From: Botryllus schlosseri
Lineage: Eukaryota
Direction of reading: 5' to 3'
Assembly (NCBI GenBank): GCA_051294905.1
Contig: JBPPKV010000064.1
Location: 1 to 64,000 of the forward strand
Length of the DNA stretch: 64,000 bases
Shown here in pieces: positions 3,971 to 54,700 of this stretch. The notes under the pieces were generated by a model, which ran no database searches, was not told the origin of the DNA, and saw nothing but the letters and a program-made list of their open reading frames with translations. Each line of letters begins with the position of its first letter. The first letter of the stretch is position 1. The position numbers and the translations under genes are program-made.

Positions 3971-5224
3971 GGTTGCCGGTAAACTCGGCACTTGGTGAAT
4001 TCGGCCGGACGAACTCGGCACTTGGTGAATTCGGCCATTGGTGAACTCGGCCATCGGGAAATTTTGTAATAAAGTGTATTAACAGCTATTAATATGAATT
4101 ATTGAACGAAGAATAGTCTTATCAAGTGATTGGCAATCTTGTAAGGAGGTCAGGGCATGCGTGGATCACGCAGTCACGGTGTGGTTAGATCACGTGATCA
4201 CGGATTGCGCAAGCGCGGGAGATAACGCGACGTTCGCACATCGACCACGCGTGGTCGGCTCGGTGTTGATTTGACTTGGCGTGGGACGGACGGACGACTT
4301 TTGAGAAGATGGATATCTGTGTTTTATGTAATAACGAAGTTATAAAGGATCACCAATAAACGTTTCCCACGAACACGAACAAAAATTTATAAACTAAAAA
4401 TAAATTTTTTTTTGTGCCTTTGGAGAGACGGATATTAGGGTTGGGGTGGGAGTATTAGGGTTGGGGAAAGAGGGATATTCATATTAGGTTTGGGGTTAGG
4501 GGGATATTAGGGTTTGGGGAAAGGGAGATTGGAGGTGGGTTAGGGTATCCCAAGATTAGGGTTGGGGATGTTAGGGAAGGGGAGATACTAGGTTGGGGGA
4601 TTGGAGGTGGGTTAGGGTATCCCATGAGTTGGGTTTGGGGATTGGAGGTGGGTTAGGTTATCCCAAGATTAGGGTTGGGGGAAAGGGGGGTTGGAGGTGG
4701 GTTAGGGTATCGCAAGATTAGGATGTGGGGATGTTAGGGAAGGGGGGATATTAGGTTGGGGGAAAGTGGGTTAGGGTATCCCAATATTAGGGAAGGGGGG
4801 ATATTAGGTTGTGGAAAAGGGTGATTGGAGGTGGAGGTGGGTTAGGGTATCCCAAGATTAGGGTTGGGGGATGTTAGGTAAGGGGGGATATTAGGTTGGG
4901 GTAAATGTGGATATTAGGGGAAAGGAGGATTGGAGGTGGGTTAGGATCAAAGTTGGAGTTAGGATATCCCAAGATTAGTGCCGAGTTCACCGGCAAACAT
5001 TCCAGTAACCAATCATGGTGACCGGTACCGTTGCGCGATCTATCACGGCACGTGATTCTTCTTTTTCTGAGATATATATTTAATGCATTTTTATTATAAA
5101 ATTTCCCGATGGCCGAATTCACCAATGGCCGAATTAACCAATGGCCGAATTCACCAAGTGCCGAGTTCACCAAGTGCCGAGTTCGTCCGGCCGAATTCAC
5201 CAAGTGCCGAGTTCACTGGTAATC
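3971..5224. mobile_element. Non-autonomous TIR element (foldback/MULE- or hAT-like) with repeat-built TIRs and a G-rich core
   Basis: Long inverted ends made of ggccgaattcaccaa/aactcggcacttggtg units. Exact 8-bp flanking duplication tgtcacca at 3963-3970 and 5225-5232. Confidence 0.85.
4430..4975 (+). repeat. G-rich strand-asymmetric minisatellite with GGTTAGGG/TTAGGG-like motifs
   Basis: Repeated unit ~gattggaggtgggttagggtatcccaagattagggttgggg, with many G3-G6 runs on the + strand. Confidence 0.9.
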
Positions 5225-5490
5225 TGTCACCAAGGTATAGTGCCACATAGTTCAAATTTCAGTGCAAATTCTGTTCTGTATTACCGGCCTGCAACTGGCA
5301 ACTGCTGTTTAAGCACGACAGTTTTAACGGAATATATCATGACGGCCTTCAACTATATAAACTTGATTCTGTGAGAACGTATACGCACACCATTGCTGTC
5401 AGTCGAATTAATAGTATATCTGGTATGACTTTCAGTGAGTAATAGACAAGGAGTGTTACGTGCTTATACTGCCGTGTTTGTGTAGTATCT

Positions 5491-6500
5491 ATATATGACC
5501 ACTGTGATTCTGCCAGAAAATGCTTACGTCATATTTCCGAAATCACTGAGTCATTGTTGTCGCAATGATTCACTTGTGCTAAAATCAAATATTATAACCG
5601 GAAAAACAATTTCGCGACAGATTTGGAGTGCAAACTAACTGAAACACACGAGTTTAATCAATAAATGGCGCAAACGGTGTGATCAATACAATATGTCATC
5701 GAAACTTGGAAGGAGTGCTTCATTTAACAACCGCCAGGTAGTACTTATGGCATCTAAATTTTCAGCCGTTACGTAATCTACGTAGGCGGACCTATTTCGA
5801 TTCTCGCCTGTAGCCGAACTTATAAATTGCGGCATTACAGTCGACCTATACCAAACACGAACGTGACGTTGATCGCAATAATCGTAATCATTTATATTCT
5901 GATGTGCTCAAGACACATAGTTTGCAATGCGATGTAGTTAACCGGCAAGAAGATGTTGCATTTACCTATTATGGTATTTTAATCAAACAACGACTAAAGC
6001 CAATTGGCCGATGTAACAGTGTGGGATAGGCTGTCTTCGTTAAACGTTATTATTTGTTTTTTTTTTCTGCTCGATATCACATATAATCTTTTGTGGAGTG
6101 TTTCATCGGGCGTCTTGACGCCGTAAGAAATAGTCAAAAATGGTGGAAGGAACACAAATTAACCTCTGAAGCTTCGGCTACAGGCGAGAATCGAAATAGG
6201 TCCGCCTACGTAGATTACGTAACGGCTGAAAATTTAGATGCCATAAGTACTACCTGGCGGTTGTTAAATGAAGCACTCCTTCCAAGTTTCGATGACATAT
6301 TGTATTGATCACACCGTTTGCGCCATTTATTGATGAAACTCGTGTGTTTCAGTTAGTTTGCACTCCAAATCTGTCGCGAAATTGTTTTTCCGGTTATAAT
6401 ATTTGATTTTAGCACAAGTGAATCATTGCGACAACAATGACTCAGTGATTTCGGAAATATGACGTAAGCATTTTCTGGCAGAATCACAGTGGTTATATAT
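5491..6500. repeat. Near-perfect inverted repeat: 328-bp arms (5491-5818, 6173-6500) around a 354-bp spacer
   Basis: Manual reverse-complement comparison; only about two mismatches seen. Confidence 0.92.
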
Positions 6501-14900: not shown

Positions 14901-17900
14901 TTCGCGTAGGCTATGCATACAAATGAGGAAAGTTACATCAGCGCGTGTTAACTAGTTGTATTATGTAGCTTGCAATTCATGCAAGTTTCGAAACTTCCAC
15001 ACTGAGTCTTTTAAAATAGATAGAAACGAAAAAAACTAATCGAAAAAATTTACGAAGTTTGGATGCGGCATATTTAGGTTTTCTAAAAATTATTCATACC
15101 CATGACTCGAAATATTGTTAACTAACTTATCATGTTCTGAAGTCTCATACATGCACCGACTCTGTGCATTCAATGTAGGGGTAGCTGACTTGGAGACAGA
15201 AAAACACACATATTTGACCGTAACATGGTCAGTCTTCACACCGCAGAAACACAGCCGCTTGGTTAACATCACAAAACCGCAATTGAACTCAAGATTGCCA
15301 TACACGGAATCGCTGTTAACGATGTCTGACTGCGGCGTTTCGACGAGTAACGAATTCTCGTATTCTCGAGACCATCACGACAAGACTCTAACCCACCACA
15401 TCCGTGGTTTCAGTTGATCATATCGAAGAATATCATGTCCATCCGTGTTACCACCCACAGATTTCGCCATCCTCACATGGTAGTGCTAAGACACAGACAA
15501 GACGCGGTGGTGGAAATATTGAAAATGAGAAAGCAGACCTTGGTGTCATTTGATTTGGATTTTACACCCGATGAACCCACCATTCGTACTGCGCATTGGG
15601 ATGAGGATTCTATCATTGATGTCGAGGGAAAGGAGATGTACAGATTTGTTGGTGTCGTGAATATTCAACGAAAGTCTGGGTATATGGTTGTACATGGTTC
15701 GCGTATTTGACTGTGGAGATATCGCTATACATAACGTGCTGTTCACCGTATCGATAGCACCAACGAATATCCGCGAAAGGGTTGTAATCTCGGTGAAATA
15801 GTGTGCGACACATTTTTCCACAAGTCGAATGCATGTCGGTTCATACTAAGACCATGTCACGGTCAAATATGTGTGTTTTTCTGTCTCCAAGTCAGCTACC
15901 CCCCACATTGAATGTACAGAGTCGGTGCATGTATGAGACTTCAGAACATGAATTTGTAATCCATGATGCTTGTAGTGCCGATCATGATGTTATCCATGAT
16001 GTATGTAATGTCACACACCTCGTTTACGCGAATACTTGGTATCTATGAACAATCGTGAAGTATACTGGATGTGTAATGTCTTGTTATTTTCATGGAAACA
16101 TGGGGGGTGTAACATGTTTGAATATTGTTCATTGGTTTGTCGATTCAGAGTTGATATCCAGATCCGGGTCCTAGTTTAAGTTTTAGAAAATATGATACCG
16201 ACATCCCGACATCTTTCGAAAACAAAACAGTGGTCAATGCTTAAGAGACCATTTTTACTATTTTTCATCGCCATAAGTCATTCTGGACCGCGAAAACGCA
16301 TTGTACGATATAGATGAAACTTATGCAAATCCTAGGATACTCATTTTCAAAGTAGCTTAGATCTCGAAATAAGCTCTGACTCGGTCAGTCTTCACACCGC
16401 AGAAACACAGCCGCTTGGTTAACATCACAAAACCGCAATTGAACTCAAAATTGCCATACACGGAATCGCTGTTAACGATGTCTGACTGCGGCGTTTCGAC
16501 GAGTAACGAATTCTCGTATTTGGTATTGATTGTGACACATAGTCAAAACAGCGACAGTTTTCACAACCCGATACATACATTGAACCAACTGATGTAAGGT
16601 GAAACACTACGTTCGCAGCAAAAAAGTTTGCAGGGTATGACCACCACCAACATATAGAGTAGTGAGTGAGTAATTATCCTACATACCCCGATTTTACTAT
16701 ATTCCGAGATCCGGATCACGATTCAAGTCTACCTGAGAATCCGAACCACCCTGTGAAGTTGATATATCAAGTTGTGAACGGTGAAAGGGTTGTAATCTCG
16801 GTGAAATAGTGTGCGACACATTTTTCCACAAGTCGAATGCAGTTCGGTTCATACTAAGACCATGTCACGGTCAAATATGTGTGTTTTTCTGTCTCCAAGT
16901 CAGCTACCCCCACATTGAATGTACAGAGTCGGTGTATGTATGAGACTTCAGAACATGAATTTGTAATCCATGATGCGTGTAGTGCCGACCATGATGTTAT
17001 CCATGATGTATGTAATGTCACACACCTCGTTTACGCGAATACTTGGTATCTATGAACAATCGTGAAGTATACTGGATGTGTAATGTCTTGTTATTTTCAT
17101 GGAAACATGGGGGTATAACATGTTTGAATATTGTTCATTGGTTTGTCTATTCAGAGTTGATATCCGGATCCGGGTCCTAGTTTAAGTTTTAGAAAATATG
17201 ATACCGACATCCCGACATCTTTCGAAAACAAAACAGTGGTCAATGCTTAAGAGACCATTTTTACTATTTTTCATCGCCATAAGTCATTCTGGACCGCGAA
17301 AACGCATTGTACGATATAGATGAAACTTATGCAAATCCTAGGATACTCATTTTCAAAGTAGCTTAGATCTCGAAATAAGCTCTGACTCGCTATTCTCCTC
17401 AAAGCATGGAATTATCACGAGTATCACCTTCGGTCACTGAAGAAAAGTATGAAATTATATCCGAAGCATATTCCTTGACTAGGAATTTTATCATGTACGA
17501 ACTCGACGGCTCATGCGTTAAGGTAAATACGAAAGCAGAGAGAACCTTACGTCGAGTTGGGGATGAAATGTTCGAGCGACATCGAACTGTCCTAAACGCA
17601 GTCTCCAAACGTCTCCGCTATGGTGATGTCGAAGTCAATGAAAAATATAAAGAATATTTACCCGATGAGCGAATGTTCCTGATGATAGCTGATGAAATTT
17701 ACAAAGATACCAAAGAAAATTGGGGTAGGATTGTCTCCCTTTTTGTGGTCGGTAGCATTCTTGCTCGCAAGAACGAGGATGAACATCACGGGGACCATAT
17801 AGAAGCTATCATACAGACAGTCGGAAATTACATTGCTAGCAGAAGACTAAAGTGGATTATGAAATTCTGGTAAATTCTGGTATTTGCGAAAAAGGTATTG

Positions 17901-20900
17901 CCCTAGCCCGTCAAAATGTTGCTTCATTCAGTTCCTATCATATTTGTTTTTTTATAACTAAAATTTGTTACATCCAGTTCGTTTAGTGACAGTGTAGGCC
18001 TACTTGTTGATGCGACTGTGATTAGACTAGTGGACCTCCGAGGTTGTATCAATCAGTTTTATCCAACAATACTGATCAATTCAGGACTGTTCAAAAACAA
18101 GGTTTTGCTGTTTAGTTTATAAACTTTGAAATGATTATCAATTGCAGATTTACCTACCGTAAATAATATTTTTCGAATTCAAAATTTTCTACGTCAATAA
18201 TTTCTGCCGACTGGAATTGAGTCATATATGTTATGCATCGTAAATTTAAACAACCTGACAGTTTCAGTAAAGTATAAGAAAATAGCGAAAATTTTCGTAT
18301 TGACTCGACTTGAACTTGAGTCATTGTACATAACCAGTGGCGGCTCGTGACAATATCGGGTGGTGGGGCAAGGGCTGCAAGCGACTTTTTATCAAAATGA
18401 CGTCACATTGGCGTTTTCCAACGTAAACAAGTAACTAATGATGGTACGGTAACATGAATTTCCCGGCAACAGTGATTTTAACGTATGTACCATACGAGAG
18501 GTCCGCTGGTGAGCTGTGACTTGAAGTGTGGTAACTGCGTAAACGGCGTACGGAACAAAGATTCAACACGGTTCATGTTCGCACTAGACCTGACTAATTA
18601 TCTGCAGAAATGGAAATGACTATAACTCGAGAGATAGCGTAAGCCTAATTGGAAAGGTCAACGAGTTCGGATAGATACGCAATTGTTATCTCATAGATTG
18701 GGCCTGTCATATTGAATCCAAAACATTAATCTGAAGAACTAAGAATTGCAGCCTCTAAAATTCGGTCTCGGTACAGCATAGGAGATTTTGGCCTTGAAAC
18801 TGGAGACTGTAACACGACACATACGGCTTTATTACTGTCTATAGGTCTGCTGCGAAATCACCTTTGAAAAATATATTACCGAATAAATACGTGGATGAAA
18901 GCCTTAAACTTATTACACTGTTACATGACATCATCGAGAAGTGGCCTCATGGCCCTTTTCGGTATGGTACACTGTCAAAATTAATGCGAACAGACCAACA
19001 CCGAATCTTGCGTAAAATTTACTGAGGAATAGGCTGATCAAGTGATCAGCTGTTAGCCGCCATCAAAAACAAAATAGCTATCGCGCTTGACATGGGGTTG
19101 TAAGCAAATGGCTTGAAGGCCACAATTTCACGGTGAAATTGACATTGGAGAATATAATATCAAAGTAAATATTTGAATGCAAACTGAGAATGATATCATC
19201 ATCTCAGTTAACGTTACCGCAGATACACCGGCTTTTGCGTGGAATTCGCAATGCGTTGTAGGATCAGATGTGTCAGATCGGAGCACATCTCTACCATACT
19301 CTACCTTGAAAACGAAATTACTACCCTAATCATTGAGTGTCAACCTCGAGACTTGGCACAGCGTTCGATACTAAAATCAAGACATACCGTGCAAAAGCTT
19401 ATGACGGATCTAGGTAAGGAGCATCGTTAAAATCAATAGAGACCAATACCGGCTTTGCGTATAATCTGTTAGCGATAAATGACGAGTCAGTTCTCACTCG
19501 AATTAGGAAACGTAATTACCACTAACACAGTTCAGTGACAAACTTAAAACTTGGTACAGCGTTCGATACTAACATTAAGACTTACCGTGCCAAATGTCAT
19601 AACCGATCTCAGTATTGAATATCGTCAAAATCAATGGATACCAATACCGGCTTTTGAGTAAAATCTGTTTGCGATACATGACGGATCAGCACACACTTAA
19701 CTTCGGAAACGGAATTACTACCCCAAACTATAAGCAGAAACCTTGAAACTTGAGGTAGTGTTAAATACCACCATCACGACATGACATACCAAGTTTCAAG
19801 AGTTTTCGTGGTGTGAAACACCATCAAAATCGACCAATACCAGCAAAGGTCGACCAAACGCATATGACGGTAACCGAGTTCAGCTATAGATACGATTGTT
19901 ACAACACACCTTAGGGGCACAGAGCTATTGTGCCCCGGTTGCTCGGTAATTTTATGAATAGGAGAGAGTAAATCACCGTTTCTTTATTGTGCGCGGCTTT
20001 GAGAGAATAGACAGTGAAAGCTTGTTATGAGGGCTACCGGGGCATGCCCCGGCTAGGCATTCGCAAAGCGAAAACACAAGAGAATTCGATTTTCGCAGAG
20101 ACTTCGCTATATATGGGCAATGGGCATTTACAAGCGAAAGGAATACCATTTTCGCTGTGATTTCGGTATATATAGAGAGATTGGTGTGCGTCTATAAATG
20201 GTAAAGAATTGTTATTGAACAGAATTTTAGGTGGGGCAATGCCCCAGTTGCCCTATAGGACGAGCCGCCACTGTACATAACTCAAACCAAGTCATATGAC
20301 TCGAAAAAATGATGGCTATGACAGACATTTCATTGCAACTTTGGAGAATAGTAAAGGTACCACATTATTGGTAGTTTGTCTGTCAGTCCTGATACTCTGA
20401 AAATAGGGTCAGAAACTGTTAAGAATCAGGAGAATTGCTATATTCTGAATGTGAGCTATTCTATATCGTGACTCGAGCAGAGTTGAAAACTGTAGGTTCG
20501 ACCGGATTGAACTGTAAACTGAACAGTGAACATAATCTTGGACTCGAGTCAAAACACTATGATTCAGACTCAACCCTCTACTAGCTGACTTGGACTCGGA
20601 CTTTACTCGGTGGTGAATTGGAAATGAATTAACATGACTCTGGCGCGCGAGTCAAAACCATAAAAGTGTGAGTGACTTGTGACTGAACCTTGTGATTTGG
20701 TTACAACCATGTATTTTATTTTTTATAAAAAATCTAAAATCTTCTATATTTATAGCTTCTCTTGTACAGGTTGGAATTGTGACAAATTTGAAGATTAGAT
20801 TGATTTAACAATTTTATCAACTAGCCAGTAAAGTATGAAAAATATTATTTTTCACAACACAACCATAGTGTAACTGTTTGATGCGGATGTGATCAGACTA

Positions 20901-23900: not shown

Positions 23901-25278
23901 TTCAGATAGCTAGCAAAATGTAATGACGTAATCATGCCTCATACTTTGAAAAGGCAACTTGACTTGAATTTTGACTTGACTCATGACTTGACGACTAGGC
24001 TTGACTTGACTCGACTGGAGTCACCTCCAAAAATCGAGTGACTTGACTTGATTCGAGTCACCATCGAAAATCGATTGACTAGACTTGACTCGAGTCAAAA
24101 TGTGCCATGACTCGAAATAACTCGTGACTCGAAGGTAGTGACTGGATCCCAACACTGGCCGAGCGCGAAAAATATTTCCAGTTTATTGCAGCTTCGTAAC
24201 CCTGTCAGATGCTTTCATGCCCCCCAAGGGGCCGCGTCCGACAGTTTGAGAACTACTGCTCTAGTGCTCTATATTAAATCTCAATGTTCTACTCTTATAG
24301 CTTCGCTATTACAGATTGGAATTGAGCCAAATTTTATGATATTTGCCAGTAAAGTTTAAAAAATAGTTATCTTTGGTCAACCATAGTGTACCTGTTTGAT
24401 GCGGGTGTGATCAGACTGGTTAACCTCCAAGGTCGTATCGTTTATTCCTATCCGATATTGAACACTGTGCAGTGTGCATGCGTACTTTTGTGCATCATTA
24501 TTGTTGCCGTCTGTCTGGTCTGCATATCGGTTAGTCAGTGACTCCCAACCTTTTTTGACTAATCGCCCCTTATCACAAATATTTACAGGTCCGAAAAAGA
24601 GGACATAGGCCTAGAAGCGGGAAAATTATTCGCCTAAGTCTGATCGCTGGTGAATTTACTGAAAAGGGTCATTTTTCTGAGGTGGTAGGTGCTCGGAAAA
24701 CCGGTTTCCGCGTCTACTTTCCATTAAGCTGATCGCGTCATACAGAATAAGCCGTATCCGCATGTATTTTTGAACATGTTGATAAAATACATCTCACTGG
24801 AAGTTCTAACATTTTGGCCCTCACTCACACCCTGGGGACGTTATCACCCACGTTGGGAACCACTGGGTTAGCTGAAAATACCGACTCTCTCTCTCTCCAT
24901 TCAGACTTGGACTTGAGACTCGTCCATGCATACAGTCCATCATGGAGTGATGAGGTGCACGAGGAAGTTCATGAGGAGCCGGCAATCAGGCAACACCGAA
25001 ATACATCACCCAAACGAGTAAGTTCATACCAGGGTTACTGTCCGTAAAATAACCATGATTGATATTTACTTTTGCTAAACGGTGCTAACTTCTCAGATCA
25101 CAACGTGCTCCGGCATGGGAGAACCAGAAGATAATGACAGACATAACATAGTTGAAAGTAAGAATATCTCATTGAAACCGTCTTTCTGTTACACTCCATC
25201 TCAATATTTTGCTTCTGCAGTAATCGACCTGACAAGTGATACATCGTCTTGCGAAGATGAGACAGATTCAAGACAGAC
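11996..25278 (+). CDS. Partial multi-exon gene of an unidentified, probably disordered protein with SIM-like and NLS-like motifs
   Basis: Six GT-AG exons join in one open frame: 11996-12101, 21042-21145, 22147-22240, 24905-25017, 25097-25157, 25221-25278. Peptide includes PTPAKRRRK and NIVEIIDLTSDTSSCEDE. A possible next exon, 28848-28939, is phase-compatible. Start and stop were not found. Confidence 0.6.
13227..13545 (+). mobile_element. tRNA-derived SINE family A, MetaSINE-like
   Basis: A-box tagcgtaatgg and B-box ggttcgattcc, followed by gtcagaccaaagac...ggtatccatggcttccctgcttggcgctca, which resembles the Meta central domain as I recall it. Fragments at 56405-56470 (head, -), 57420-57495 (tail, +) and ~30395-30440 (tail, -). 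Confidence 0.75.
15227..17389 (+). repeat. Tandem two-unit duplication with shared head and tail and unrelated middles
   Basis: Head 15227-15364 = 16383-16520 (138 bp). Tail 15775-16383 = 16783-17389 (~608 bp, near identical). Middles 15365-15774 and 16521-16782 are unrelated. About 100 bp of the tail is also present inverted at ~15131-15230. Confidence 0.92.
17406..17873 (+). CDS. Bcl-2 family protein, Mcl-1-like, single exon, no GGW/TM tail
   Basis: BH4-like LTRNFIMYEL, BH3 TLRRVGDEM, BH1 ENWGRIVSLFVVG, partial BH2 LKWIMKFW. Good start context (aagcATGg). Confidence 0.85.
   Translation: MELSRVSPSVTEEKYEIISEAYSLTRNFIMYELDGSCVKVNTKAERTLRRVGDEMFERHRTVLNAVSKRLRYGDVEVNEKYKEYLPDERMFLMIADEIYKDTKENWGRIVSLFVVGSILARKNEDEHHGDHIEAIIQTVGNYIASRRLKWIMKFW
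18335..20273. mobile_element. Non-autonomous hAT element with internal ~195-220 bp tandem array
   Basis: TIR cagtggcggctcgt / acgagccgccactg; perfect TSD tacataac at 18327-18334 and 20274-20281. Confidence 0.9.
21291..21412 (+). repeat. 61-bp tandem duplication containing a (GA)n tract
   Basis: actctaaagagagagagagagatcagacttatattcgtctgtaccatcaggt(g/a)ctttgacc occurs twice. Confidence 0.9.
22470..22705 (+). mobile_element. 5'-truncated retroelement 3' end with (TTGA)n tail
   Basis: A reverse-complement copy lies at ~29131-29380 with the same tail. The sequence is absent from the paralogous intron at ~12.3 kb. Confidence 0.55.
23004..24258. mobile_element. Nested hAT-like MITEs: outer cagtggttctcaaac element containing a 'gactcgagtc'-rich element at 23219-24157
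   Basis: Outer TIRs cagtggttctcaaac / gtttgagaactactg. Inner TIRs cagtgttgggat / atcccaacactg, homologous to 44451-45410. TSDs are only partial. Confidence 0.75.
24536..24865. mobile_element. hAT-like MITE
   Basis: cagtgactcccaacc / gttgggaaccactg ends with a near-TSD (ggttag). The paralogous site at ~21010 is empty. Confidence 0.7.
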
Positions 25279-37245: not shown

Positions 37246-38519
37246 CAGGGCTTTGGAGCCGGAGCCGTGCATTTTCACCGGAGCCGGAGCCGGAGCTCTA
37301 CATAAAATTCTGCCGGAGCCGGAGCTGGAGCTGGAGCCCGTAATTTGAGGAGTAGCTCCGGCTCCGACCTATTTCATAAGATGCTATATGCATATACGCA
37401 ACAACCACATCTGTTGATTTATCATAATTGAACACCAGACATGAATTTTAATGCTGCGCACAGCAATGGCATATAGTAAAGTTCGTTCTAGTGCAACTAT
37501 GATGTTGTCGACAATTGACAATTATTGAGCATGACGTCACAAGCCGGCACAGCGGCACCTATAGGTCTTCGTTGCTACATATATCGGATGTTGCTGACGG
37601 CTGACAGACTCTAGATTACTATACACAACTAACCTATGGGTAGATTAGTAATCTATATACACCAGGAATGGCCAACCTTTTCGGCTAAAGGGGCACATGG
37701 AATTGACGAACGAGTGCGCGGTTCACTAGCCGCGCCAAGCGGGTAAAATTTTCCAAGTTTATAATTAAACTAGGTCAATAATATTATTACTTGAGTATTG
37801 CGGGTCTATTGTATACCGTCCGCTAGGCTCAGTTTGCAAGAACACGACTATTCGGCGTCTGGCCACATCGATATCGAAGGTCTCCGATAATATGCGACAA
37901 TCATTTTGTGCCTACATTTCACCGTCGACGATCTTGATGCGAGCGCAAACGCGAAAATACTTTCTCCCGTAATTGCGAATACAGTTAGACTCAATCGGGT
38001 AAATTAGGCGATTTTTTTCATTTTCAGTAGGGGGTAGGCTACCAAGCAAGAAATCGTGTGACAATTAAACACGCAAAGTGTGAAGAAAAATTTCGCTACT
38101 ATTTTAGTTTATCGTAATGTACGACGATTTACTGAAAATGTGACTGGACCCAGGATCTGTCAATGCGTCGGAACTGATATTTTAGTCAGCAACATCCCAA
38201 GTGTCGCAGTCAGAATTGTAATTTCTGGTTGGCATTGCAAGTTCACAATCTGAGCAATTCATTTTCGATAATATAATAGGAAATTTCCTCGCGGGCCACG
38301 CAAAACCCTCTCGCGGTCGCGGGCAACATTTGGCCCGCGGGTTTGCCACCCCTGGTATAGACTGGCCAATTCGATAATTTCAGAGCCGGAGCCGGAGCTG
38401 GAGCCGGAGCAGTGGTAATAATGCGGCTCCGGAGCTGGAGCCGGAGCTAATGTATGATAGAAGAGAGCTCCGGAGCCGGAGCTGGAGCAGTTTAAATTTA
38501 CGGCTGCTCCAAAGCCCTG
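37246..38519. mobile_element. ggagcc-repeat TIR element (ends lack a shared TSD) with nested hAT at 37663-38354
   Basis: Ends cagggctttggagc / gctccaaagccctg have dissimilar flanks. Inner element caggaatggccaac / gtttgccacccctg has TSD atatacac/gtatagac (6/8). Confidence 0.75.
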
Positions 38520-39392
38520 CCACCAAGGGACAGATTTCTTGTCCATATTCTTTGTCTTTGGTATTGATCGATTCGCTGCTGTCTTTATGCTTTTTGTTAG
38601 AATAGTATTTGCAGACTCCACGTCTCGTTGATCGGACAAATCGACCATTTCATCTGCAATTCGAGAAAACTTCTTCCAATTTGCTTTCTTGAGAGACCAC
38701 GATAGTGGTCGATAAAAAGAAGATATCGCCGAGTTTGTCATATACTTCGTGAATACTACGAAATGATCACTTCCTAGCAGCGACGAAGATATTTCAGTTT
38801 GGCATCTCGCGGCTACATCTTGAGTAGCGAGTGTTAAATCTAGCAACGACCAACGATTGACAGCATTGCTCGCGAGATTGATATGTGTTGGAGTTGAAGA
38901 GTTCAACATGACTAAGTTTGCGTGATCGAGGACATTAAAAAGTTTAGTCCCTCGTTGGTTCGTTTGGTAACTCCACGACCAATGATGTGCATTAAAGTCG
39001 CCAAAGACAATGGATTTTGGTGGTAACGTCTCGAAAATGCTCGCATCACTGTCGCGTAAGCGGCAGTCGGGTGGGATGTACACATTGTACAATGATAGGC
39101 CATGAAGCTTCACACAAAGTACTTCGATGTCGGTTGTAGCAACTGCTTCGATGCTGGAGTTATGTGAAGATTTAATAAAGATCGCTAATCCACCGGAATG
39201 AAGGGATTTGTCCTTTCTGTGACAGTGATATCCTGGGAATTTCGGAGAGTATTTTTCGATAAGGTGTGTTTCCTGGAGAATTATCGCATCTGGAGCCCGT
39301 TCCAGAGTCGTGAGAAGGTGTTTTAGTTCGTGATGCTTCCTATATAATCCTCTGCAATTCCACTGTAAAAAGTTAAGTCCTATATTATCCAT
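38520..39392 (-). CDS. LINE ORF2 apurinic endonuclease domain (truncated)
   Basis: Motifs QWNCRG, LQET, GDFN, LDLTL, SDH and PWW. The remaining ORF-track residues (QGFG...) are read-through into the MITE. Confidence 0.9.
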
Positions 39393-40746
39393 CGTTTGTG
39401 GGATTTGTCATCGGATTGGTGTCATTGATATCATGGAAGGGTTCGAAAATGTTTCTCATCGTGACAACATCTGCCTGTCGACCGAGATATTTCAAAGCAA
39501 CTTTGGATACTATATTGTATATATCGCACTCCGTGTCTGATTTGCAGGCCGCTAATGTAAGCTTCACTATTTCAGCCAGTAGTGCGATAAGATGGATCGG
39601 ATCAATATACGCTAACGAAGATTGATTATTTGGTTCCAAATTAGGATGATTGTTTGGGTCGTTGCTTTCAATGTCTTTGTTTATGTGATTAGAGGTTGTT
39701 TGTAGCGGAATCTTCCTGATGGTGGCTCGGTGACTTGGGCTGTTGATTGTTGATCGTTGCTGATTGATGACACGCGTTGCGCTATCCTGCGCCGCTTCAC
39801 TGTAAAGACGCGTAGCTTGTGTTTCGGGTGTTTCGGAATTGAGTATTGATTTAGCTTCGGAGTGAGTAACCTTGGAACGTTCTTTTATGATTTGTAATTT
39901 CGCCTGTTCTTTGTACACCGGGCACCCGCCATAAGCAGCACTGTGCGGTTGTTTACAATTAATGCAACATAAATCTTTGGTACACTTATCAACCTCGTGA
40001 TCACGACCCCCACATTTTGAACAGCATTGTTTCCCACGACAGTTCTCTTTTGTGTGGCCATATCTATTGCATCCAAAACATCTGACAGGTGGCGGGTTAT
40101 AAGGTTTGGTGCGGAACCGTAGGTATGAAAAATGCACGTAGTCAGGGAATGTCTCAGATGTGAAACATAACAAAATCGAGAGGCTGCTATCATATTTTCC
40201 ATCTACTTTGCGCTTTAGCCGTTTAACGAAATTGACGCCAATTTCAAAGAACTCTTTCAAGATCTCTTCTTCTGTGATATCCAGCGGAACGCCGGATATC
40301 ACTGCTCGTGCTCCGTAAGGTTTGACACCAAATAATGAGGTTTTGACTTCGATCAGGTTGGAGTCCTTTCCTATTTGATCTATAGTGAGAAGTTTATCAG
40401 CCTGTTCTTTGGTTTTACAAGTTACAACTAGATCTCCAGAAGGCAATCTACGTATTTTTTCAAAATTGCCAATGTTTATCTTAAGTGCCTCACATACCTT
40501 TGTAGGATGTTGGTGTCCCATGCGTGTTCCATCAGACCCCGATAGCAGCACGTCAAGTTGTTGACTTGTTGCTTTTTGGCTATTAGATTCCCGTTCCTTC
40601 CCAACAGCATTATCCATCAGTGCAAATTTCTTGGCAGGTATTTTGCTTCTTACTTCGCACCACTCCCCATCCCCGCATTCTTCCTCAGAAGAATTGAAGG
40701 TAGTTGAAGACTTCCTCTTTGCGGAGGAACTTGTCTCCATGTCCAT
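39385..40746 (-). CDS. LINE ORF1 gag-like nucleic-acid-binding protein (453 aa)
   Basis: Three zinc knuckles: CFGCNRYGHTKENC, CSKCGGRDHEVDKC, CINCKQPHSAAYGGC. No internal stops. Confidence 0.93.
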   Translation of the reverse strand: MDMETSSSAKRKSSTTFNSSEEECGDGEWCEVRSKIPAKKFALMDNAVGKERESNSQKATSQQLDVLLSGSDGTRMGHQHPTKVCEALKINIGNFEKIRRLPSGDLVVTCKTKEQADKLLTIDQIGKDSNLIEVKTSLFGVKPYGARAVISGVPLDITEEEILKEFFEIGVNFVKRLKRKVDGKYDSSLSILLCFTSETFPDYVHFSYLRFRTKPYNPPPVRCFGCNRYGHTKENCRGKQCCSKCGGRDHEVDKCTKDLCCINCKQPHSAAYGGCPVYKEQAKLQIIKERSKVTHSEAKSILNSETPETQATRLYSEAAQDSATRVINQQRSTINSPSHRATIRKIPLQTTSNHINKDIESNDPNNHPNLEPNNQSSLAYIDPIHLIALLAEIVKLTLAACKSDTECDIYNIVSKVALKYLGRQADVVTMRNIFEPFHDINDTNPMTNPTNDG

Positions 40747-44450: not shown

Positions 44451-45410
44451 CAGTGTTGGGATCAAGTCACTACCTTCGAGTCACGAGTCATTTCGAGTCA
44501 TTGCACATTTTGACTCGAGTCAAGTCAAGTCAATCGATTTTCGAAGGTGACTCGAGTCAAGTCAAGTCAGTCGATTTTTGGAGGTGACTCGAGTCAAGTC
44601 GAGTCAAGTCAAGTCAAGTCACGAGTCAAGTCACAATTCAAGTCAAATTGAATTTTCGAGGTGTAAGAGGCGTGATTACGTCATTGTATTTTGCTAGCTG
44701 TCTGAAATACAGATGGAGTGGTCATTGATTTTGAACCGATGAACGAATATAGAGTTGAATATACACCCAACTAAGGCGCTGTATCGCTCACATATAAGTA
44801 GAACTAATAAACTACGTAAGTAATTGCACAGCCTCAGTTTATAGTTACCAGCCAAAATGAAGAAACGAATTGATAAGATGCAATACATTATCCTTTTGCA
44901 TATTGATATGACACAATTCGACCCTGCGCCAATGGTTGAGGACTATGTAAACTATTTTCGAATTCAATTTCAACAAAACAAGAGGTTTGGTCAAGTTAAG
45001 AACGCAGAACAGAAATAGACATTTTGCTATTAAATTTCTTTACTTTACGACAGCGTGGGCTGTAAGCTTCGATCACTTCGTTTGCGATCAATATATTTGT
45101 TAAAGAACAATGGAGGCTCAGTAAAACGCACGATCATTGAATGATTGGTCGCTCTCACGGGTTACGCCAGCGTTGCGCGAACAATCTGAACATATGCAAG
45201 ATAGTGATTTTTATCGACACCGATTACTTGATGACTTGAAATTGACTCGTGAATTTTGCTCCGAGTCACGAGTCAATCCACATTTCTGATACGCCGAGTC
45301 AAGTCAAGTCAAGTCATTTTAGCAAAGTGACTCGAGTCAAGTCAAGTCATACGAAAAAGTGACTCGAGACTGACTCGAGTCAAGTCATGACTCGAGTCAT
45401 CCCAACACTG
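44451..45410. mobile_element. hAT-like non-autonomous element rich in gactcgagtc/caagt repeats
   Basis: TIR cagtgttgggat; perfect TSD gtaccacc at 44443-44450 and 45411-45418. Family copies at 23219-24157, ~26285-27130 (diverged) and 63892 to window end. Confidence 0.92.
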
Positions 45411-48795: not shown

Positions 48796-51700
48796 ATGTC
48801 AACTACTGCTGGTACTACTACGGTACCAAGCCAGGCGGAATTGGAAGGAGGCGACATTGCAGTGATCGTTGTATATTTCATTTTCATAATAGCAGTCGGA
48901 CTATGGGTAAGGTTTTTGGATGCACATTATTAGTAAAACACTAGAGTCAGGTAACAGGTTTGGGTATATTCAGACAATGTTCCGTACGAATCGAGGCAGC
49001 GTGAATGGGTTTTTCCTAGCTGGACGAAATATGCATTGGCTACCGGTGGGCGCGTCTCTCTTCTCGAGCAATATCGGAAGCGGGCATTTCGTGGGTTTGG
49101 CCGGGACTGGTGCAGCTGCCGGTATCGCAGTTGGCGCTTTCGAATGGAACGTAAGCTTGGAATAGACTCGGAGAACTACAGATAATTCTAATTGACTATA
49201 ATTCAGTGGTTCTCAACCTTTTTGTCTTCGCGGACCCCTTTGGGACCTTCACGGACCCTCGCGGACCCCCTCGCGGTGCAAATGATAATTGTAGGCTAGT
49301 GATAAACAGCGACAAAATGACTTTTCTTGAAAATGACATGTAGAAATTAGGTAGACTTTTACTATTTCAAAGCTAATTTCGCAACTGCATTTCTTGAAAT
49401 ACGTGGTCGTGTCGTAAAAATCCGCGCCTTCGATTTCATATGAAGGACTGCCGAAAATCCATTTCCACCACCTGGCGAATGTAAAAACAACGCGTACCGC
49501 TCCTGACGGCACATTTGCGTATGATCGCAACAAATATGGCACCAAAATTGACAAAAAATTCTTTTTAATGAACATATAACGTCAAGCCTGGTCATTTCTA
49601 TGTAGCAACTCATCTTGAAGTTATTATGGAAAAATGGTTGTGTATATCACAGGAGAAAATGGATTTTTGTAAAGATTTCGAAGTCACTGTGATTGAACTT
49701 ACTATAATCAAACTTTTAATTTTTTCCACAATCCCCAACAAAACACCTCTAAACAGCGTCGACTTCCGTAATCCAACATCTATGTGTTGGAGGTTTACCT
49801 AGGCTCCTCCTCGCCACCTAATCCGCGTCTGCGGTGTCTTACAAAAGCCTAAAGACGGGTCGTGCTATAAGTCGGCAGTTAATCAAAATAAAGAGAATAT
49901 CGGCCTGGTGTAAATGACCATAGTAGTCGACAAACACCATGAATACCCTAAAACAAAGAAAAACCTCTAAACAGCAGAATATTTGTATCAGCAGGCCATT
50001 GGCAATTTAGCAATTGAAATGAGTCTGCACAGTTTCATCTCAGACGGCCATTCTGTTGATGTGAGTTCTTTAGTTTTACTAGTAATGAAGCGAAACTGCA
50101 TCGTGATTTTTCTAATTAAAAAAAAATACAAATTATGTTATCAACTATTTTGTAAATTTAGAGGCATCGCGGATCCCCGGTGGAGAACCACTGGTCTAAT
50201 TGGACTATTGGAGTGAAATGCCGGTGGTCTAATTTTAGTGTAATTTGCGAAATTTTTCTATGCTCCAATTTTAATTACAATTTAATTATTCTGGTTTACC
50301 TGAAAATGTTACAAGACAACTGTATAGTGCGAAACGAGACAAGCTGGCTGTACATATATTTGCCATTGTCTTACTTATGAGACTGAACTTTGGTTCGATA
50401 TGAACTGAACGTGAGCTAATATCTAATTTTTCATAAATTCAGCAATTCTAATCTAATTCGAAAAAACTTCGTATCCATAATTCTAATTCTGATATAATTT
50501 GGAAAAAATTGCAAATTTTCTAGTTGTCTAATTCTGAGTCCAGCCTGAGCTGTGATTTGATATGAACTGAGCTTGAGACAATTTCCAGGTTTTCGTAAAT
50601 TTAGTAACACCAATTCTAATCTAATTCGAAAAAGAAACTGTGTATCTATAATTATCATTATAATCTAATCGAAAGAATGTGTATCTATAATTATAATTCT
50701 AGTCTAGTTTGCAAAAAACTCTGTGTCTACACATTACAAGATTTAATCTAATTTTTTTTTAATGTGTAGCTATAATTCTAATTCTAGTCTAATTTGGGAA
50801 AAACTGTATTTCTATAATTCTAATTCTAATCTAATTTGAAAAACAATGTGTCGCTATAATTCTACTTCTAATCTAATTTGGAAAAAATGTGCGTCTACAA
50901 GTATAATTATAATCTAATTTAAAAAAATGTGTAGCTATAATTCTAATTTGGAAAAAAACTATTTCTATAATTCTAATTCTAATCTAATTTGAAAAACAAT
51001 GTGTAGCTATAATTCTAATTCTAATCTAATTTGGAAAAAATGTGCGTCTACAAGTATAATTATACTCTAATTTTAAAAAAAATGTGTAGCTATAATTCTA
51101 ATTCTAGTCTAATTTGGAAAAATGTGTCTATATTAATAATTCTAATCTTATTTAAAAAAATGTGTATCTTTAATTCCAAATGTAATCTAATTTGGAAAAA
51201 ACTGTGTGTCTATAATTCTAATTCTAATCTAATATGGAAAAAAAATGTAGCTATAATTTTAATTCTAATCAAATTAGGAAAGGCTGAAAATTTTCTATTC
51301 GTTCAATTCTGGAAGAAACACATTGTTCCACTCCTTCGTTTACAGGCCATGATCACTCTGACGTTGCTTGGATGGATATTTGCTCCGATCTACATAGCGG
51401 CAGGCGTGGTGACGATGCCTGAATATTTACGCGAGAGATTCGGAGGTCAAAGAATACGGATGTACTTGTCCGTGCTGTCTCTCTTGTTGTATATTTTCAC
51501 GAAAGTTTCCGTGAGTAACTCGTATTCATCGATATTTTGTGTGGAATTCACTTTTCCCTTGACTTTAGTGCGTTCTCTTGCGGCTCAATTAATCAATCTT
51601 GTTAAAGCAGATGGTTCCGGGCTAGGCCAAGTATAATTTACACACATAAGTATCGAAGTAGAAGACCTGGGGTTAAGTTACCATTTTGGAAAATTTATTC

Positions 51701-54700
51701 ATAAATCCCGGACCCAGATTTTAACACCGAATCGCGTCATAAAATCGAGCTATTAACCTAACGTAATCCCTTTGATTTGCAGGCTGATCTATTCGCCGGG
51801 GCCGTGTTTATAAACCAAGCTTTGCACTGGAACATCTATTTCGCCATGATTTTACTCCTCGCTATCACGGCGCTGTACACTGTTACCGGCGGTCTTGCGG
51901 CTGTGATATACACAGATACAGCGCAGACGTTGATCATGCTCATCGGCGGATTTGCTATGATGATATTGGGTTAGTATATACGCGCGACAAATTTGACGAC
52001 GCATCGCTTCTCTTCATTTGGGGAGCAGTGGTTCCAAGCCTTATTGGTCATGGTCATGGCACCAAATTTCGATTTGAAAATGTTCCACGACCCGCCTCTC
52101 AATTTGGCGTGCTGATTACTCCAAAATGGTCAGCACCTTCGACAAAACTTGTGTGGGAAGCTAGCGACTATGTTCACAGTAATAGCAATTATGCAATTAT
52201 GAACTCGTCAATCTCCGTCTCTCAATACCACATCGACGTGTATAAGTCTTTTGGAGCGATATATATCTCTATCCAATCGAACTATACTGAAGCACGTGAA
52301 ATCCTGCGCCACGCAGGCACAGATAACGATCTATAAGTTATTCCGTACATTAATAGTGATGGCAAGACACCAACCATTCTTACTATACTAGGTGGCGCTT
52401 ATGACACTTCGAGTGATCTGATACCTCGCTCACCTATTAGTTGGCATTCCTCAAAGCAGACTTGGACAACTAGATAATTCTAGTCTAATTTGTAAAAAAA
52501 TGTGTAGCTATTATTCTAATTATAATCTAATTTGGAAAATCTGAAAATGTTCTAGTTGTCCAAAGTTTGCCTCAAATGTCGTTTTTGTTACTATATTTCG
52601 ACTAAAATTATAAGAAATAAGCCGTTGATAGCTCCCGGTATATTGGCATTCTCGTGATAGTCATTGGCATTTAATTTTCCTCTACGAGACCCGCCCAAGA
52701 GGATAGGCCAACTACCCGTATGTCGAGAACCCCTAATTTAGATGAGTCTATTTCCAGCGTTCACCGATGTTGGCGGATACGACGAGTTACAGAAAAAATA
52801 CATGAACGCAACACCGTCGATCTTAGTCCAAAACCAGTCGTGCGGTACGCCGCGAGCTGATTCCTTCAGCGTGTTCCGAGATGCCACTACCGGAGACTTA
52901 CCGTGGCCTGGACTGACTTTTGGTCTGACGATTCTTGCCACGTGGTACTGGTGCACGGATCAAGTAGGTGGAATAGAATTACAGGCTTTGAATATGTCAC
53001 GACTGAACATCTTCAGTACTAGAAAAACTCATCTCCCAATATTTGACTCGAATCGTAAGAATTATTACTCGAATCAGATTTTTCAGGCCTGCAATTATCT
53101 TCATCCACTTGAAGTATAGTTTTGAGATGTCTTACAAATTGCTACTGCGACGACGACTAATTTTTCTACCTCTGACGATATTATGTTCGTTGACAGGTGA
53201 TCGTGCAGCGTACGTTGGCTGCGCGTACCTTGACTCACGCGAAGGGAGGCTGCGTGTTCGCTGGTTTGCTGAAAATCTTGCCAATGTACATGATGGTGAT
53301 GGTGGGGATGATTAGCCGTGTGGTTTTCACAGGTTGTTGAAGCGAACACGTTGTTAATGAGTTTCTTGTAGCCAGATTTCAACAACTAGATAATTCTAAT
53401 TGTCTATTAATTAGACTAATTAGTGAGAAATGCCGGTAATTTAATTCTAATCGAATTTGAGAAATATTTTTATGCTCTAATTTTTGGTTTTCCTGAAAAT
53501 GCTACAGGAGAACAGTAAAGCGCGAAACGAGCAAAGCTTGCTGTACATACATTTGCCAGCAGCCTCATGCTTACGAGAATGAAATCTGATTTGATATCAA
53601 CTGAACTTTATTAAATGTCCACTCCAGGCTTTTGCGAATTCAGTAATTCTAATTTTAATGAGGATAAATTTCCAAGTTTTCGCGAATTCAGAATTATAAT
53701 CCGAATCTAATTTGGAAAAACCTGTGTAGCTATCTCTCTAATTCTAATCTTATTTGAAAGAAAAAAAATATGTAGTTATGATTATATTTCTATTCTAATT
53801 TGGAAAAAAATCGTATAGCTATAATTCTAACACTAATCTAATTTAGAAAAGCTAGAAATTTTCCAATCCAGGTCGGTTGTAACTAGTCAATTTTCGCGAC
53901 TCCAAGGCACTCTCCCAATATAGTTGAAAACCTGAAAATCATTGACAAATGGCACCTCAATATTGTCATCTTCAGAGCCATTACACCTGCTGAAATGCAC
54001 CCTGAATCAGTATCATATTAAATTTTTATGCATATGAGAGTTATGGTAATACCTTTTAGGGCCTAAATTGTATGAGAGCTTAATAATAGCCTTACTTTTT
54101 ATGCGTGAAAGTTTATTTCGTTGTATATTTACAGACGCCGTTGCTTGCGCCGATCCCGACGAGTGTATGAAGTATTGTGGAACGAAAGTCGGATGTAGCA
54201 ACATCGCCTACCCTAAATTATTGCTCAAAATTTTACCTACAGGATTGAAAGGTATTTTAATAGTGTTTCTCTGCAAGCACACGCCTCGCTGGTTGTTCGG
54301 CAATTCTTTAAACTGATGATTTACCGGTATTTTGCGTTCGTCGCTTCTTAGCCTTAACCATCCTGCGGATGCTTTACTGGCGGCAATTATGACCTCGTAT
54401 CGCTGAGTTCAAATAGTTTTACCATTCGTAATACAGCATGTTTCTCAGCGAAGCGAAGGTAAACACAAAATTAAGACTGCATTTCGCTTGATATCCTCGC
54501 TAACTATTTTCGGACGGAAATAACATCACTCGTACCATAATATGTGCTCTTTTAGGATTTCTCTTCTTTGCCCAAGAAAGGTGAATGGTCCTCCGTGGAC
54601 GCTAAAAATGTTCAAATGTCCTCCTTTTTCTTATGTCTAGTTAGTTTCTCATACTTTTGACGACAGTTTTAGACGAGAATTTGTGTTTGATTAGGTAAAA

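What the first reader, a model, noticed from the sequence alone, without database searches (positions are those of the whole stretch)
17406..17960. Intronless Mcl-1-like Bcl-2 gene in mobile-looking DNA
Seen: BH4, BH3 (TLRRVGDEM), BH1 (NWGRIVSLF) and a truncated BH2. A 10-bp tandem duplication (aaattctggt, 17862-17881) creates the stop; removing it extends the frame with YLRKRYCPSPSKCCFIQFLSYLFFYN, a basic-then-hydrophobic tail. Established: the BH3/BH1 spacing resembles MCL1 (TLRRVGDG; NWGRIVTL), and many DNA viruses carry compact Bcl-2 homologs. Inference: a virus- or transposon-borne, or retroposed, apoptosis regulator in a tunicate. A possible donor (tg|gtaaat) could instead splice to a missing BH2/TM exon.
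Basis: partly seen in the sequence, partly recalled or inferred. Interest (0 to 1): 0.75.

Follow-up and report, generated by a model that had tools for sequence, protein, structure and literature searches.

The report
Truncated copy of host Bcl-2 gene
The reading frame is a real Bcl-2-family sequence, but it is a cut-off partial copy of an ordinary intron-containing sea-squirt cell-survival gene, with no sign of a viral, transposon-borne or retroposed origin.

Summary
The 155-codon ORF (17406-17873, +) is real and belongs to the Bcl-2 family (Pfam PF00452, E=2e-17). Its best solved relative is Mcl-1. Its best named relative is Styela clava 'bcl-2-like protein 2' (48% identity). The 10-bp tandem duplication at 17862-17881 is also real.

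The interpretation mostly fails. Five related loci, including a 98%-identical contig (L001), all end this exon with NGGW followed by a phase-0 GT donor. Wherever enough sequence is held, a short intron and a last exon follow, encoding the rest of BH2 and the membrane anchor.

The window shares only 626 bp (17232-17857) with L001. Similarity to L001 and to a second relative stops sharply inside BH2. The DNA after that point is unrelated, and no last-exon-like coding sequence exists anywhere in the 64 kb. The same search found that exon in all four relatives with enough downstream sequence.

Viral structures match far worse than cellular ones. No close copy exists in the viral or metagenome collections. 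No terminal inverted repeats or transposon proteins flank the ORF.

Best reading: a recent, 3'-truncated partial copy of a canonical host gene, probably a pseudogene, possibly a tail-less protein. This is ordinary and of low interest.

The parts
17232..17857 (+). Segment shared with the related locus L001: 174 bp of 5' flank plus the main Bcl-2 coding exon, cut short inside BH2
   Evidence: Ungapped 626-bp match at 98.1% to L001 1884-2509. L002 matches 17613-17857 at 84% and ends at the same base. No significant similarity beyond either end in shuffle tests.
17406..17873 (+). ORF of 155 codons plus stop: a Bcl-2-family fold from helix 1 to the start of BH2. The last five codons and the stop lie in unrelated DNA
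   Evidence: AlphaFold model with mean pLDDT 88.1 and seven helices. Foldseek best matches are cellular Bcl-xL, NRZ and Mcl-1.
17544..17570 (+). BH3 motif (residues 47-55) in helix 2
   Evidence: Aligned to the BH3 of Mcl-1. Helix 43-58 in the model.
17718..17744 (+). BH1 motif (residues 105-113, NWGR core)
   Evidence: W106, G107 and R108 are invariant in 51 relatives. Aligned to Mcl-1 BH1.
17853..17870 (+). BH2 remnant: the first Trp-Ile of BH2 is kept; the NGG of NGGW is missing
   Evidence: The near-invariant GG columns have no residue in the window protein. Relatives read NGGW followed by GT.
17862..17881 (+). Perfect 10-bp tandem duplication starting 4 bp after the end of homology; it holds the stop codon
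   Evidence: One of only two such duplications in the window, against 0.06 expected by chance.
17858..18900 (.). DNA after the junction: unrelated to the exon end, intron or last exon of the relatives, and single-copy within the window. The outer end given here is arbitrary
   Evidence: Local-alignment scores are no better than shuffles, while the control L002 against L001 scores 78 versus a null maximum of 19. No self-match in the window. First AATAAA only at 18882.
16783..17389 (+). Repeat A, copy 2, directly upstream of the ORF. Its last 158 bp are the gene's 5' flank as in L001
   Evidence: 98-99% identical to 15775-16383. L001 1884-2041 matches both copies.
15775..16383 (+). Repeat A, copy 1: a second copy of the 5' flank without the exon, followed by repeat B
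17390..17405 (+). Pyrimidine-rich stretch ending in AG just before the ATG: a possible 3' splice acceptor of an upstream intron (inference)
   Evidence: Sequence. In Styela the corresponding exon starts at an AG acceptor about three codons upstream of the aligned position. PMC8998228 states that mouse pro-survival Bcl-2 genes generally have an untranslated first exon.

Best explanation
This is a recent, 3'-truncated partial copy of an ordinary multi-exon tunicate pro-survival Bcl-2-like gene.

In relatives, the main exon encodes helix 1 through NGGW of BH2. It ends at a phase-0 GT donor. After a short intron it is spliced to a last exon encoding the rest of BH2, helix 8 and the C-terminal membrane anchor.

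In the window, only 626 bp of that gene are present: 174 bp of 5' flank plus the exon up to the first Trp-Ile of BH2. At 17857/17858 the gene is joined to unrelated DNA, which happens to add five codons and a stop. The copy therefore lacks the BH2 core, the conserved donor, the intron and the anchor exon.

Inferred: the 10-bp tandem duplication 4 bp beyond the junction is most simply a scar of the joining event, such as a templated insertion or slippage during break repair.

Inferred: the copy is most likely a non-functional gene fragment. If it is transcribed at all, it would give a soluble, tail-less, BH2-defective Bcl-2 fold.

Shown: family membership, the gene structure in relatives, the bounds of the shared segment, and the absence of the last exon from the window.

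Inferred: the direction of the event (the window state is derived), the repair-scar reading, and the loss of function.
For: Family membership: Pfam Bcl-2 E=2e-17 over profile positions 1-95 of 100. Mcl-1 is the best solved sequence match at E=1.7e-8. The Styela clava protein is 48% identical. The AlphaFold model has pLDDT 88 with seven helices, and its best matches are cellular pro-survival proteins at TM about 0.7.

Gene structure in relatives: L001 to L005 all read NGGW followed by GT(A/G)(A/G)G. L001 goes on with a 183-nt intron and a 37-codon exon. The Styela gene has three coding exons with the same intron. PMC8998228 describes conserved exon boundaries, with the anchor on a separate exon.

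Truncation: L001 (98%) and L002 (84%) both stop matching the window at 17857, yet they match each other for about 147 nt further. The window state is therefore the derived one.

Missing exon: tblastn with last-exon peptides finds that exon in L001, L003, L004 and L005 (E from 1e-3 down to 1e-21). In the window the best hit is E=0.3, on the wrong strand and 36 kb away.

Donor: the only GT(A/G)A near the ORF end is in phase 2.

A recent event: 7 differences in 452 coding bp and 5 in 174 flanking bp relative to L001. An intact ORF therefore says nothing about selection.

Other close copies are also defective. L001 has one in-frame stop and L002 has one frame change.
Against: The ORF is intact from the ATG to the junction, keeps its 5' flank, and is predicted to fold well. 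A truncated but expressed protein is therefore not excluded.

The rest of this genome could not be searched. I cannot show that a full-length parent copy coexists with this one, nor whether this is a duplicate or the original locus after rearrangement.

L001 and L002 come from low-coverage metagenome assemblies of unknown species.

An exon too diverged to recognise, or one lying outside the 64 kb, cannot be ruled out by sequence alone.
Confidence: 0.7

Rival explanations
1. A working new gene. The truncated copy is transcribed from its retained 5' flank and makes a soluble, anchor-less Bcl-2-like protein that modulates the full-length family members.
For: The ORF is intact, with BH3 and BH1 unchanged. 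The model is confident, with seven helices. 174 bp of 5' flank are retained. From general knowledge, tail-less isoforms of Bcl-2-family genes exist in vertebrates.
Against: The near-invariant GG of BH2 is missing, as are helix 8 and the anchor. The copy differs from L001 by only about 2%, so ORF intactness is expected by default. The count of 2 synonymous to 3 non-synonymous changes is too small to show constraint. There is no AATAAA within 1 kb of the stop. No identical or near-identical protein is on record.
Confidence: 0.12
2. The ORF is still the first coding part of a spliced gene. The phase-2 GT at 17870 joins it to an exon that is unrecognisable or lies outside the window.
For: A GTAAAT sits at the end of the ORF. 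All relatives splice at this part of BH2.
Against: The family's intron is in phase 0 after the Trp codon in all five relatives, and that donor and the NGG codons are absent here. No last-exon-like peptide is found in any frame of the 64 kb, although the same search recovers it at 45-51% identity in relatives. Introns in relatives are only about 100-500 nt.
Confidence: 0.08
3. An assembly artefact or structural allele. The true locus is L001-like, and the window has a misjoin or a private rearrangement at 17857/17858.
For: Both ends of the shared 626 bp are sharp. The region upstream is a tangle of 98-99% identical local repeats that could mislead an assembler.
Against: The junction lies in sequence that is single-copy within the window, not in a repeat. 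The 10-bp duplication beside it looks like a biological repair scar rather than a collapse. The flanks of L001 are not colinear with the window on either side.
Confidence: 0.07
4. One reading: a Bcl-2 homologue carried by a virus or a transposon, or a processed retrocopy.
For: The gene lies in repeat-rich DNA, with duplicated and inverted segments just upstream and a LINE-like element 20 kb away. Viral Bcl-2 homologues share the fold.
Against: The closest relatives are intron-containing animal genes. The viral library gives a best E=2e-3 at 13-18% identity. BALF1 is below its cut-off. There is nothing in IMG/VR or the JGI metagenomes. There are no inverted termini round the ORF. No transposon or viral domains occur in ORFs of 85 aa or more between 6 and 38 kb. 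There is no exon-exon junction, and no A-run directly after the shared segment. Homology extends 174 bp upstream of the ATG.
Confidence: 0.03

Closest known systems
Styela clava 'bcl-2-like protein 2' (XP_039252627; P0002/P0101, locus L003)
   Same: 48% identity over residues 12-153. Same order of helix 1, BH3, BH1 and BH2. Same exon layout for the main exon. It is the closest named protein.
   Different: The Styela gene is complete. It has an extra N-terminal coding exon, NGGW, the BH2 intron, and a last exon with the membrane anchor. It also has a NUDIX gene as a neighbour, which is absent from the window.
Unnamed two-exon gene on ENA contig L001 (ERZ650156)
   Same: 98% nucleotide identity over 626 bp, including 174 bp of 5' flank. 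Same start codon.
   Different: L001 continues with NGGW, a GT donor, a 183-nt intron and a 37-codon anchor exon, then AATAAA about 40 nt after its stop. It carries one in-frame stop. Its flanks are not colinear with the window.
Vertebrate Mcl-1 (for example PDB 6qfm, 1wsx)
   Same: Best solved relative by sequence (E=1.7e-8). BH3 and BH1 are near-identical in their cores. The folds superpose at TM about 0.7.
   Different: Identity over the structural alignment is only about 20-23%. The loop between BH3 and BH1 is about 10 residues longer here. By structure, Bcl-xL, NRZ/BCL2L10, Bcl-2 and A1 match equally well, so no orthology to Mcl-1 is shown. The window copy has no long N-terminal region, no complete BH2 and no anchor.
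Tail-less isoforms of Bcl-2-family genes that end in intron-derived codons (for example the beta isoform of BCL2; recalled from general knowledge, not tested here)
   Same: The main exon is followed by a few unrelated codons and a stop. There is no membrane anchor.
   Different: Those isoforms keep the full NGGW of BH2 and arise by alternative processing of an intact gene. Here the exon itself is cut short and the anchor exon is gone from the locus.
Viral Bcl-2 homologues (BALF1, the v-Bcl-2 proteins of gammaherpesviruses, and the iridovirus, poxvirus and asfarvirus homologues)
   Same: Same helical fold, with TM up to about 0.7.
   Different: 13-18% identity and best E=2e-3. Pfam BALF1 scores 15.7 bits against a cut-off of 25.8. 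There is no viral context, and the relatives carry introns.

Membership tests
Bcl-2 family (Pfam PF00452, multi-motif members) | Passes the curated family profile | tested here: met
   63.9 bits against a cut-off of 31.4, E=2.2e-17.
Bcl-2 family (Pfam PF00452, multi-motif members) | BH1 with NWGR core and BH3 with the L-x(3)-G-D core | tested here: met
   W106, G107 and R108 are invariant in 51 relatives. BH3 and BH1 align to those of Mcl-1.
Bcl-2 family (Pfam PF00452, multi-motif members) | Complete BH2 (W-x(3,4)-GGW) | tested here: not met
   The two near-invariant Gly columns are empty in the window protein. The profile match stops at 95 of 100. All five relatives have NGGW.
Bcl-2 family (Pfam PF00452, multi-motif members) | Eight-helix globular fold around a central hairpin | tested here: inconclusive
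   Seven helices are predicted with pLDDT 88, and the model matches Bcl-xL, Mcl-1 and NRZ at TM about 0.7. Helix 8 cannot be present. The stability of the truncated fold is not testable here.
Bcl-2 family (Pfam PF00452, multi-motif members) | C-terminal hydrophobic membrane anchor | tested here: not met
   The ORF ends five codons after the junction. No anchor exon is in the window.
Canonical animal Bcl-2 gene structure | Phase-0 intron directly after the Trp codon of NGGW, followed by a last exon for the end of BH2 plus the anchor | tested here: not met
   The NGGW-then-GT donor is present in all of L001-L005, and the last exon in four of them (L002 is too short). In the window this donor is absent, and the only nearby GT(A/G)A is in phase 2.
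Mcl-1 orthologue | Closer to Mcl-1 than to other pro-survival members; long regulatory N-terminal region | tested here: inconclusive
   Mcl-1 is best by sequence among solved chains. Foldseek ranks Bcl-xL and NRZ equally. NCBI names the closest protein 'bcl-2-like protein 2'. There is no long N-terminal region. No phylogeny was made.
Viral Bcl-2 homologue | Closest relatives are viral, or the gene lies among viral genes | tested here: not met
   BFVD best E=2e-3 at 13-18% identity. BALF1 is below its cut-off. No relative in IMG/VR. No viral domains in neighbouring ORFs.
Processed retrocopy | Exons joined without the intron, poly(A) tract at the 3' end, no upstream homology, target-site duplication | tested here: not met
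   No last-exon sequence follows the exon. No A-run is visible directly after the shared segment. 174 bp upstream of the ATG are shared with L001. Flanking target-site duplications were not searched for.
Transposon-captured gene fragment | Fragment bounded by element termini (inverted or other) and present in several dispersed copies | tested here: inconclusive
   No inverted repeats bracket the ORF. No further copies are in the window or in public protein or contig collections. The organism's own genome could not be searched. Nested repeats lie directly upstream.

The most novel reading that the evidence does not exclude
A newly born gene. A partial duplication has created an anchor-less, BH2-defective Bcl-2-like protein that keeps its BH3 and BH1 and its own 5' flank. 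It is expressed as a soluble regulator of the full-length family members in a tunicate.
Probability: 0.1. Interest if true: 0.4.

Novelty: new member of a known kind. Interest (0 to 1): 0.15.

Why it matters
It matters little beyond annotation.

It shows that an apparently 'compact, intronless' Bcl-2 ORF in an animal genome can simply be the large main exon of the canonical gene. Prokaryote-style gene callers make the same error on relatives: several database proteins end in NGGW followed by read-through intron codons.

It also documents a small group of very similar Bcl-2-like copies, each with one disabling feature: the window, L001 and L002. That may be of use to anyone cataloguing the apoptosis gene set of ascidians. 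If the truncated copy proved to be expressed, it would be a modest example of gene birth by partial duplication.

Tried and rejected
1. The word-indexed protein search with the whole ORF gave nothing, because the close relatives are fragments outside the length range. Searches with the two halves each found only the two ORFs of L001.

2. An exact look-up of the ORF and of two ORFs in the upstream repeat found no other contig.

3. IMG/VR and JGI metagenome scans gave pattern hits but no relatives.

4. A scan of the + strand from 17874 to 38000 for frames ending in a hydrophobic stretch gave eight candidates. None has a BH2-like start.

5. tblastn of last-exon peptides against the window gave nothing below E=0.3.

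6. I considered that 17858-17890 might be a scrambled version of the exon end and donor of L001 or L002. Local alignment is no better than shuffles, so I rejected this.

7. I considered that homology might extend upstream of 17232. It is not significant.

8. Rfam and tRNA scans of the window gave nothing.

9. Pfam scans of 20 further ORFs (19 in the window, one in L001) found only a LINE endonuclease and symporter exons far from the ORF.

10. Synteny with the Styela locus: the NUDIX neighbour is shared by L003 and L005 but absent from the window and from L001.

11. The organism was not identified. The search for project PRJEB22134 led only to an unrelated survey paper.

12. dN/dS against L001 rests on too few differences to use.

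13. The read-through proposed in the finding was not carried out with any tool.

The output lists match bounds per frame for L002, which indirectly points to its frame change. None of these places is given in the report or the notes.


Full report
**Observation.** The window holds an ATG-started ORF of 155 codons at 17406-17873 on the + strand. It is the longest ORF between 6 and 38 kb.

It passes the Pfam Bcl-2 model at E=2.2e-17 (63.9 bits, cut-off 31.4). The match covers profile positions 1-95 of 100, so it stops just before the end of BH2.

Against solved structures, the best sequence matches are Mcl-1 chains (E=1.7e-8). The BH3 and BH1 cores are nearly identical, and the loop between them is about 10 residues longer here. 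No BH4 model matched, although a long first helix is predicted.

The perfect 10-bp tandem duplication at 17862-17881 is real. It is one of only two such duplications in the 64 kb, against 0.06 expected from shuffles.

**Relatives.** A full HMMER scan of 1.84 billion representatives gave 100 hits, and every one that carries a name is an animal cellular protein. The best named hit is Styela clava 'bcl-2-like protein 2' at 48% identity. Others are Latimeria Mcl-1, a Branchiostoma NR13-like protein, an Antedon BAX-like protein, and an unnamed Lamellibrachia protein.

Identity to three proteins of the Styela group (P0002, P0003, P0004) is 40-49%, and at most 33% to every other protein in the alignment. 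This fits a tunicate host, though the organism itself was not identified.

An AlphaFold model built with these relatives is confident (pLDDT 88.1, pTM 0.83). It shows seven helices. Foldseek places it with cellular pro-survival proteins: Bcl-xL, NRZ/BCL2L10, Mcl-1, Bcl-2, Bcl-w and A1, at TM about 0.65-0.75. Viral Bcl-2 homologues share the fold but match much worse, with a best E of 2e-3 at 13-18% identity. Pfam BALF1 is below its cut-off.

**Gene structure in relatives.** Several database 'proteins' end in NGGW followed by odd residues. These are read-throughs of a splice donor by prokaryote-style gene callers.

The DNA confirms this. In all five loci fetched (L001 to L005), the exon ends with codons for N-G-G-W followed directly by GT(A/G)(A/G)G, a phase-0 donor.
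- In L001 a 183-nt intron with a pyrimidine tract and AG follows. Then comes a 37-codon exon with the end of BH2, a hydrophobic anchor and a stop, with AATAAA about 40 nt later.
- The annotated Styela gene has three coding exons with the same BH2 intron.
- L004 and L005 also hold the last exon a few hundred bases downstream.

This is the conserved layout described for pro-survival Bcl-2 genes, with the anchor on a separate exon (PMC8998228). 'Intronless' is therefore a misreading. The ORF corresponds to the large main exon.

**What is different in the window.** L001 matches the window without gaps at 98.1% over 626 bp, 17232-17857. That span is 174 bp of 5' flank plus the exon up to the first Trp-Ile of BH2.

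L002, a more distant copy at 84%, stops matching at the same base. Yet L001 and L002 go on matching each other through the exon end and about 130 nt of intron. In the control test they score 78 against a null maximum of 19, whereas the window beyond 17857 scores no better than shuffles against either.

Upstream of 17232 there is likewise no significant similarity to L001. The flanks of L001 are not colinear with the window.

The state in the window is therefore the derived one. The gene is cut inside BH2 and joined to unrelated, locally single-copy DNA. That DNA supplies five codons and the stop.

The near-invariant GG of BH2 is missing. So are the family's donor, the intron and the last exon.

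tblastn with the last-exon peptides of L001 and Styela finds that exon in every relative with enough sequence, at E from 1e-3 down to 1e-21 and even at 45-51% identity. In the 64-kb window the best hit is E=0.3, on the opposite strand 36 kb away.

It could not join a canonical last exon in frame.

**The mobile-DNA idea.**
- No inverted repeats bracket the ORF.
- No transposon or viral domains occur in any ORF of 85 aa or more between 6 and 38 kb. The only recognisable element is a LINE-like endonuclease ORF 20 kb away.
- No further copies exist in the window, in the 15-billion-protein collection, in IMG/VR or in the JGI metagenomes.
- A processed retrocopy would carry the exon-exon junction and lack upstream homology. 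The opposite is seen.
- The pyrimidine-rich stretch ending in AG just before the ATG lies within about three codons of the acceptor of the corresponding Styela exon. This suggests, by inference, that the shared 5' flank is intron rather than transcript, and so that the copy was made from genomic DNA.

A 609-bp segment that includes 158 bp of the gene's own 5' flank occurs twice at 98-99% identity (15775-16383 and 16783-17389). Each copy is associated with a 138-bp segment B, and there is an inverted 101-nt piece at 15130-15230. The neighbourhood has clearly undergone recent duplication and rearrangement.

**Mechanism.** I read the locus as a recent partial duplication or rearrangement of a canonical host gene.

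The 10-bp tandem duplication starting 4 bp beyond the junction is far from a chance event. It is most simply a scar of the joining, such as a templated insertion or slippage during double-strand-break repair. That is an inference.

The differences from L001 are 5 in 174 flanking bp and 7 in 452 coding bp: 2 synonymous, 3 non-synonymous, and one involving a stop in L001. These are too few to show constraint, and they mean that ORF intactness is expected by default.

The two other close copies are each defective once. L001 has one in-frame stop and L002 has one frame change. Both come from low-coverage assemblies, so sequencing error is possible.

From established knowledge of the family, the BH2 tryptophan-glycine core and the anchor are important for activity and localisation. 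The likeliest outcome is therefore a non-functional fragment (confidence 0.7). A soluble tail-less protein, a splice to an unrecognised exon, and an assembly misjoin remain as minor rivals. The viral, transposon and retrocopy readings together get about 0.03.

**Limits.** The organism's own genome and transcriptome were not available. Copy number, the existence of a full-length parent locus, expression and splicing are all untested. It is also moot, because the DNA after 17857 is not the gene's own continuation.

**Verdict.** This is an ordinary truncated copy of a known kind of gene, and interest is low.

Noticed in passing
window 15130-17389: Nested recent local repeats directly upstream of the ORF. 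The 609-bp repeat A occurs at 15775-16383 and 16783-17389 (98-99%). The 138-bp repeat B occurs at 15227-15364 and 16383-16520 (99%). A 101-nt inverted copy of part of A lies at 15130-15230. The last 158 bp of A are the Bcl-2 exon's 5' flank, so that flank exists twice, once without the exon.
   Followed up: partly
window 38259-40746 (- strand): LINE-like retrotransposon remnant. A 453-aa ORF with no Pfam match overlaps by 8 nt a 377-aa ORF with an endonuclease domain (Exo_endo_phos_2, E=3e-19). No ORF of 110 aa or more follows it where a reverse transcriptase would be expected.
   Followed up: no
window 51031-56350 (+ strand): Three ORF pieces match successive parts of the sodium:solute symporter family (PF00474, profile positions 44-104, 164-218 and 338-396). 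These are exons of a host transporter gene. Tandem arrays of 42/83-bp units lie at 50612-51281, running into the first piece, and at 53692-53850, between the second and third.
   Followed up: no
window 24002-24097, 44511-44646, 45302-45368: Short arrays of a 33-37-bp unit built on TGACT/GAGTCA palindromic motifs recur at three places. This is probably a dispersed small repeat family.
   Followed up: no
window 4000-6000: A strongly G-skewed stretch (GC skew 0.28) holds several G-rich tandem repeats (GGTTGGGG-type units, 4453-4731) and 16-bp arrays at 3978-4054 and 5111-5216.
   Followed up: no
L001 389-557 and 3849-4016; window 15483-15759: The contig with the full-length relative has 169-bp direct repeats (82% alike) on both sides of the gene, about 3.3 kb apart. 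They belong to the same repeat family as an inverted stretch 1.5 kb upstream of the window ORF (64-67% identity).
   Followed up: partly
L003 and L005: The Styela gene and the P0004 locus share a NUDIX-domain gene downstream on the opposite strand, which marks them as orthologous loci. Neither the window nor L001 shows it.
   Followed up: partly
proteins P0003, P0004, P0005, P0006, P0008, P0009, P0010: Many database 'proteins' of this family end in NGGW or GGW followed by Val-Ser (P0008: Val-Gly). These residues come from reading through the GT donor after the Trp codon, so they are exon-only calls on eukaryotic contigs, not true C-termini.
   Followed up: yes
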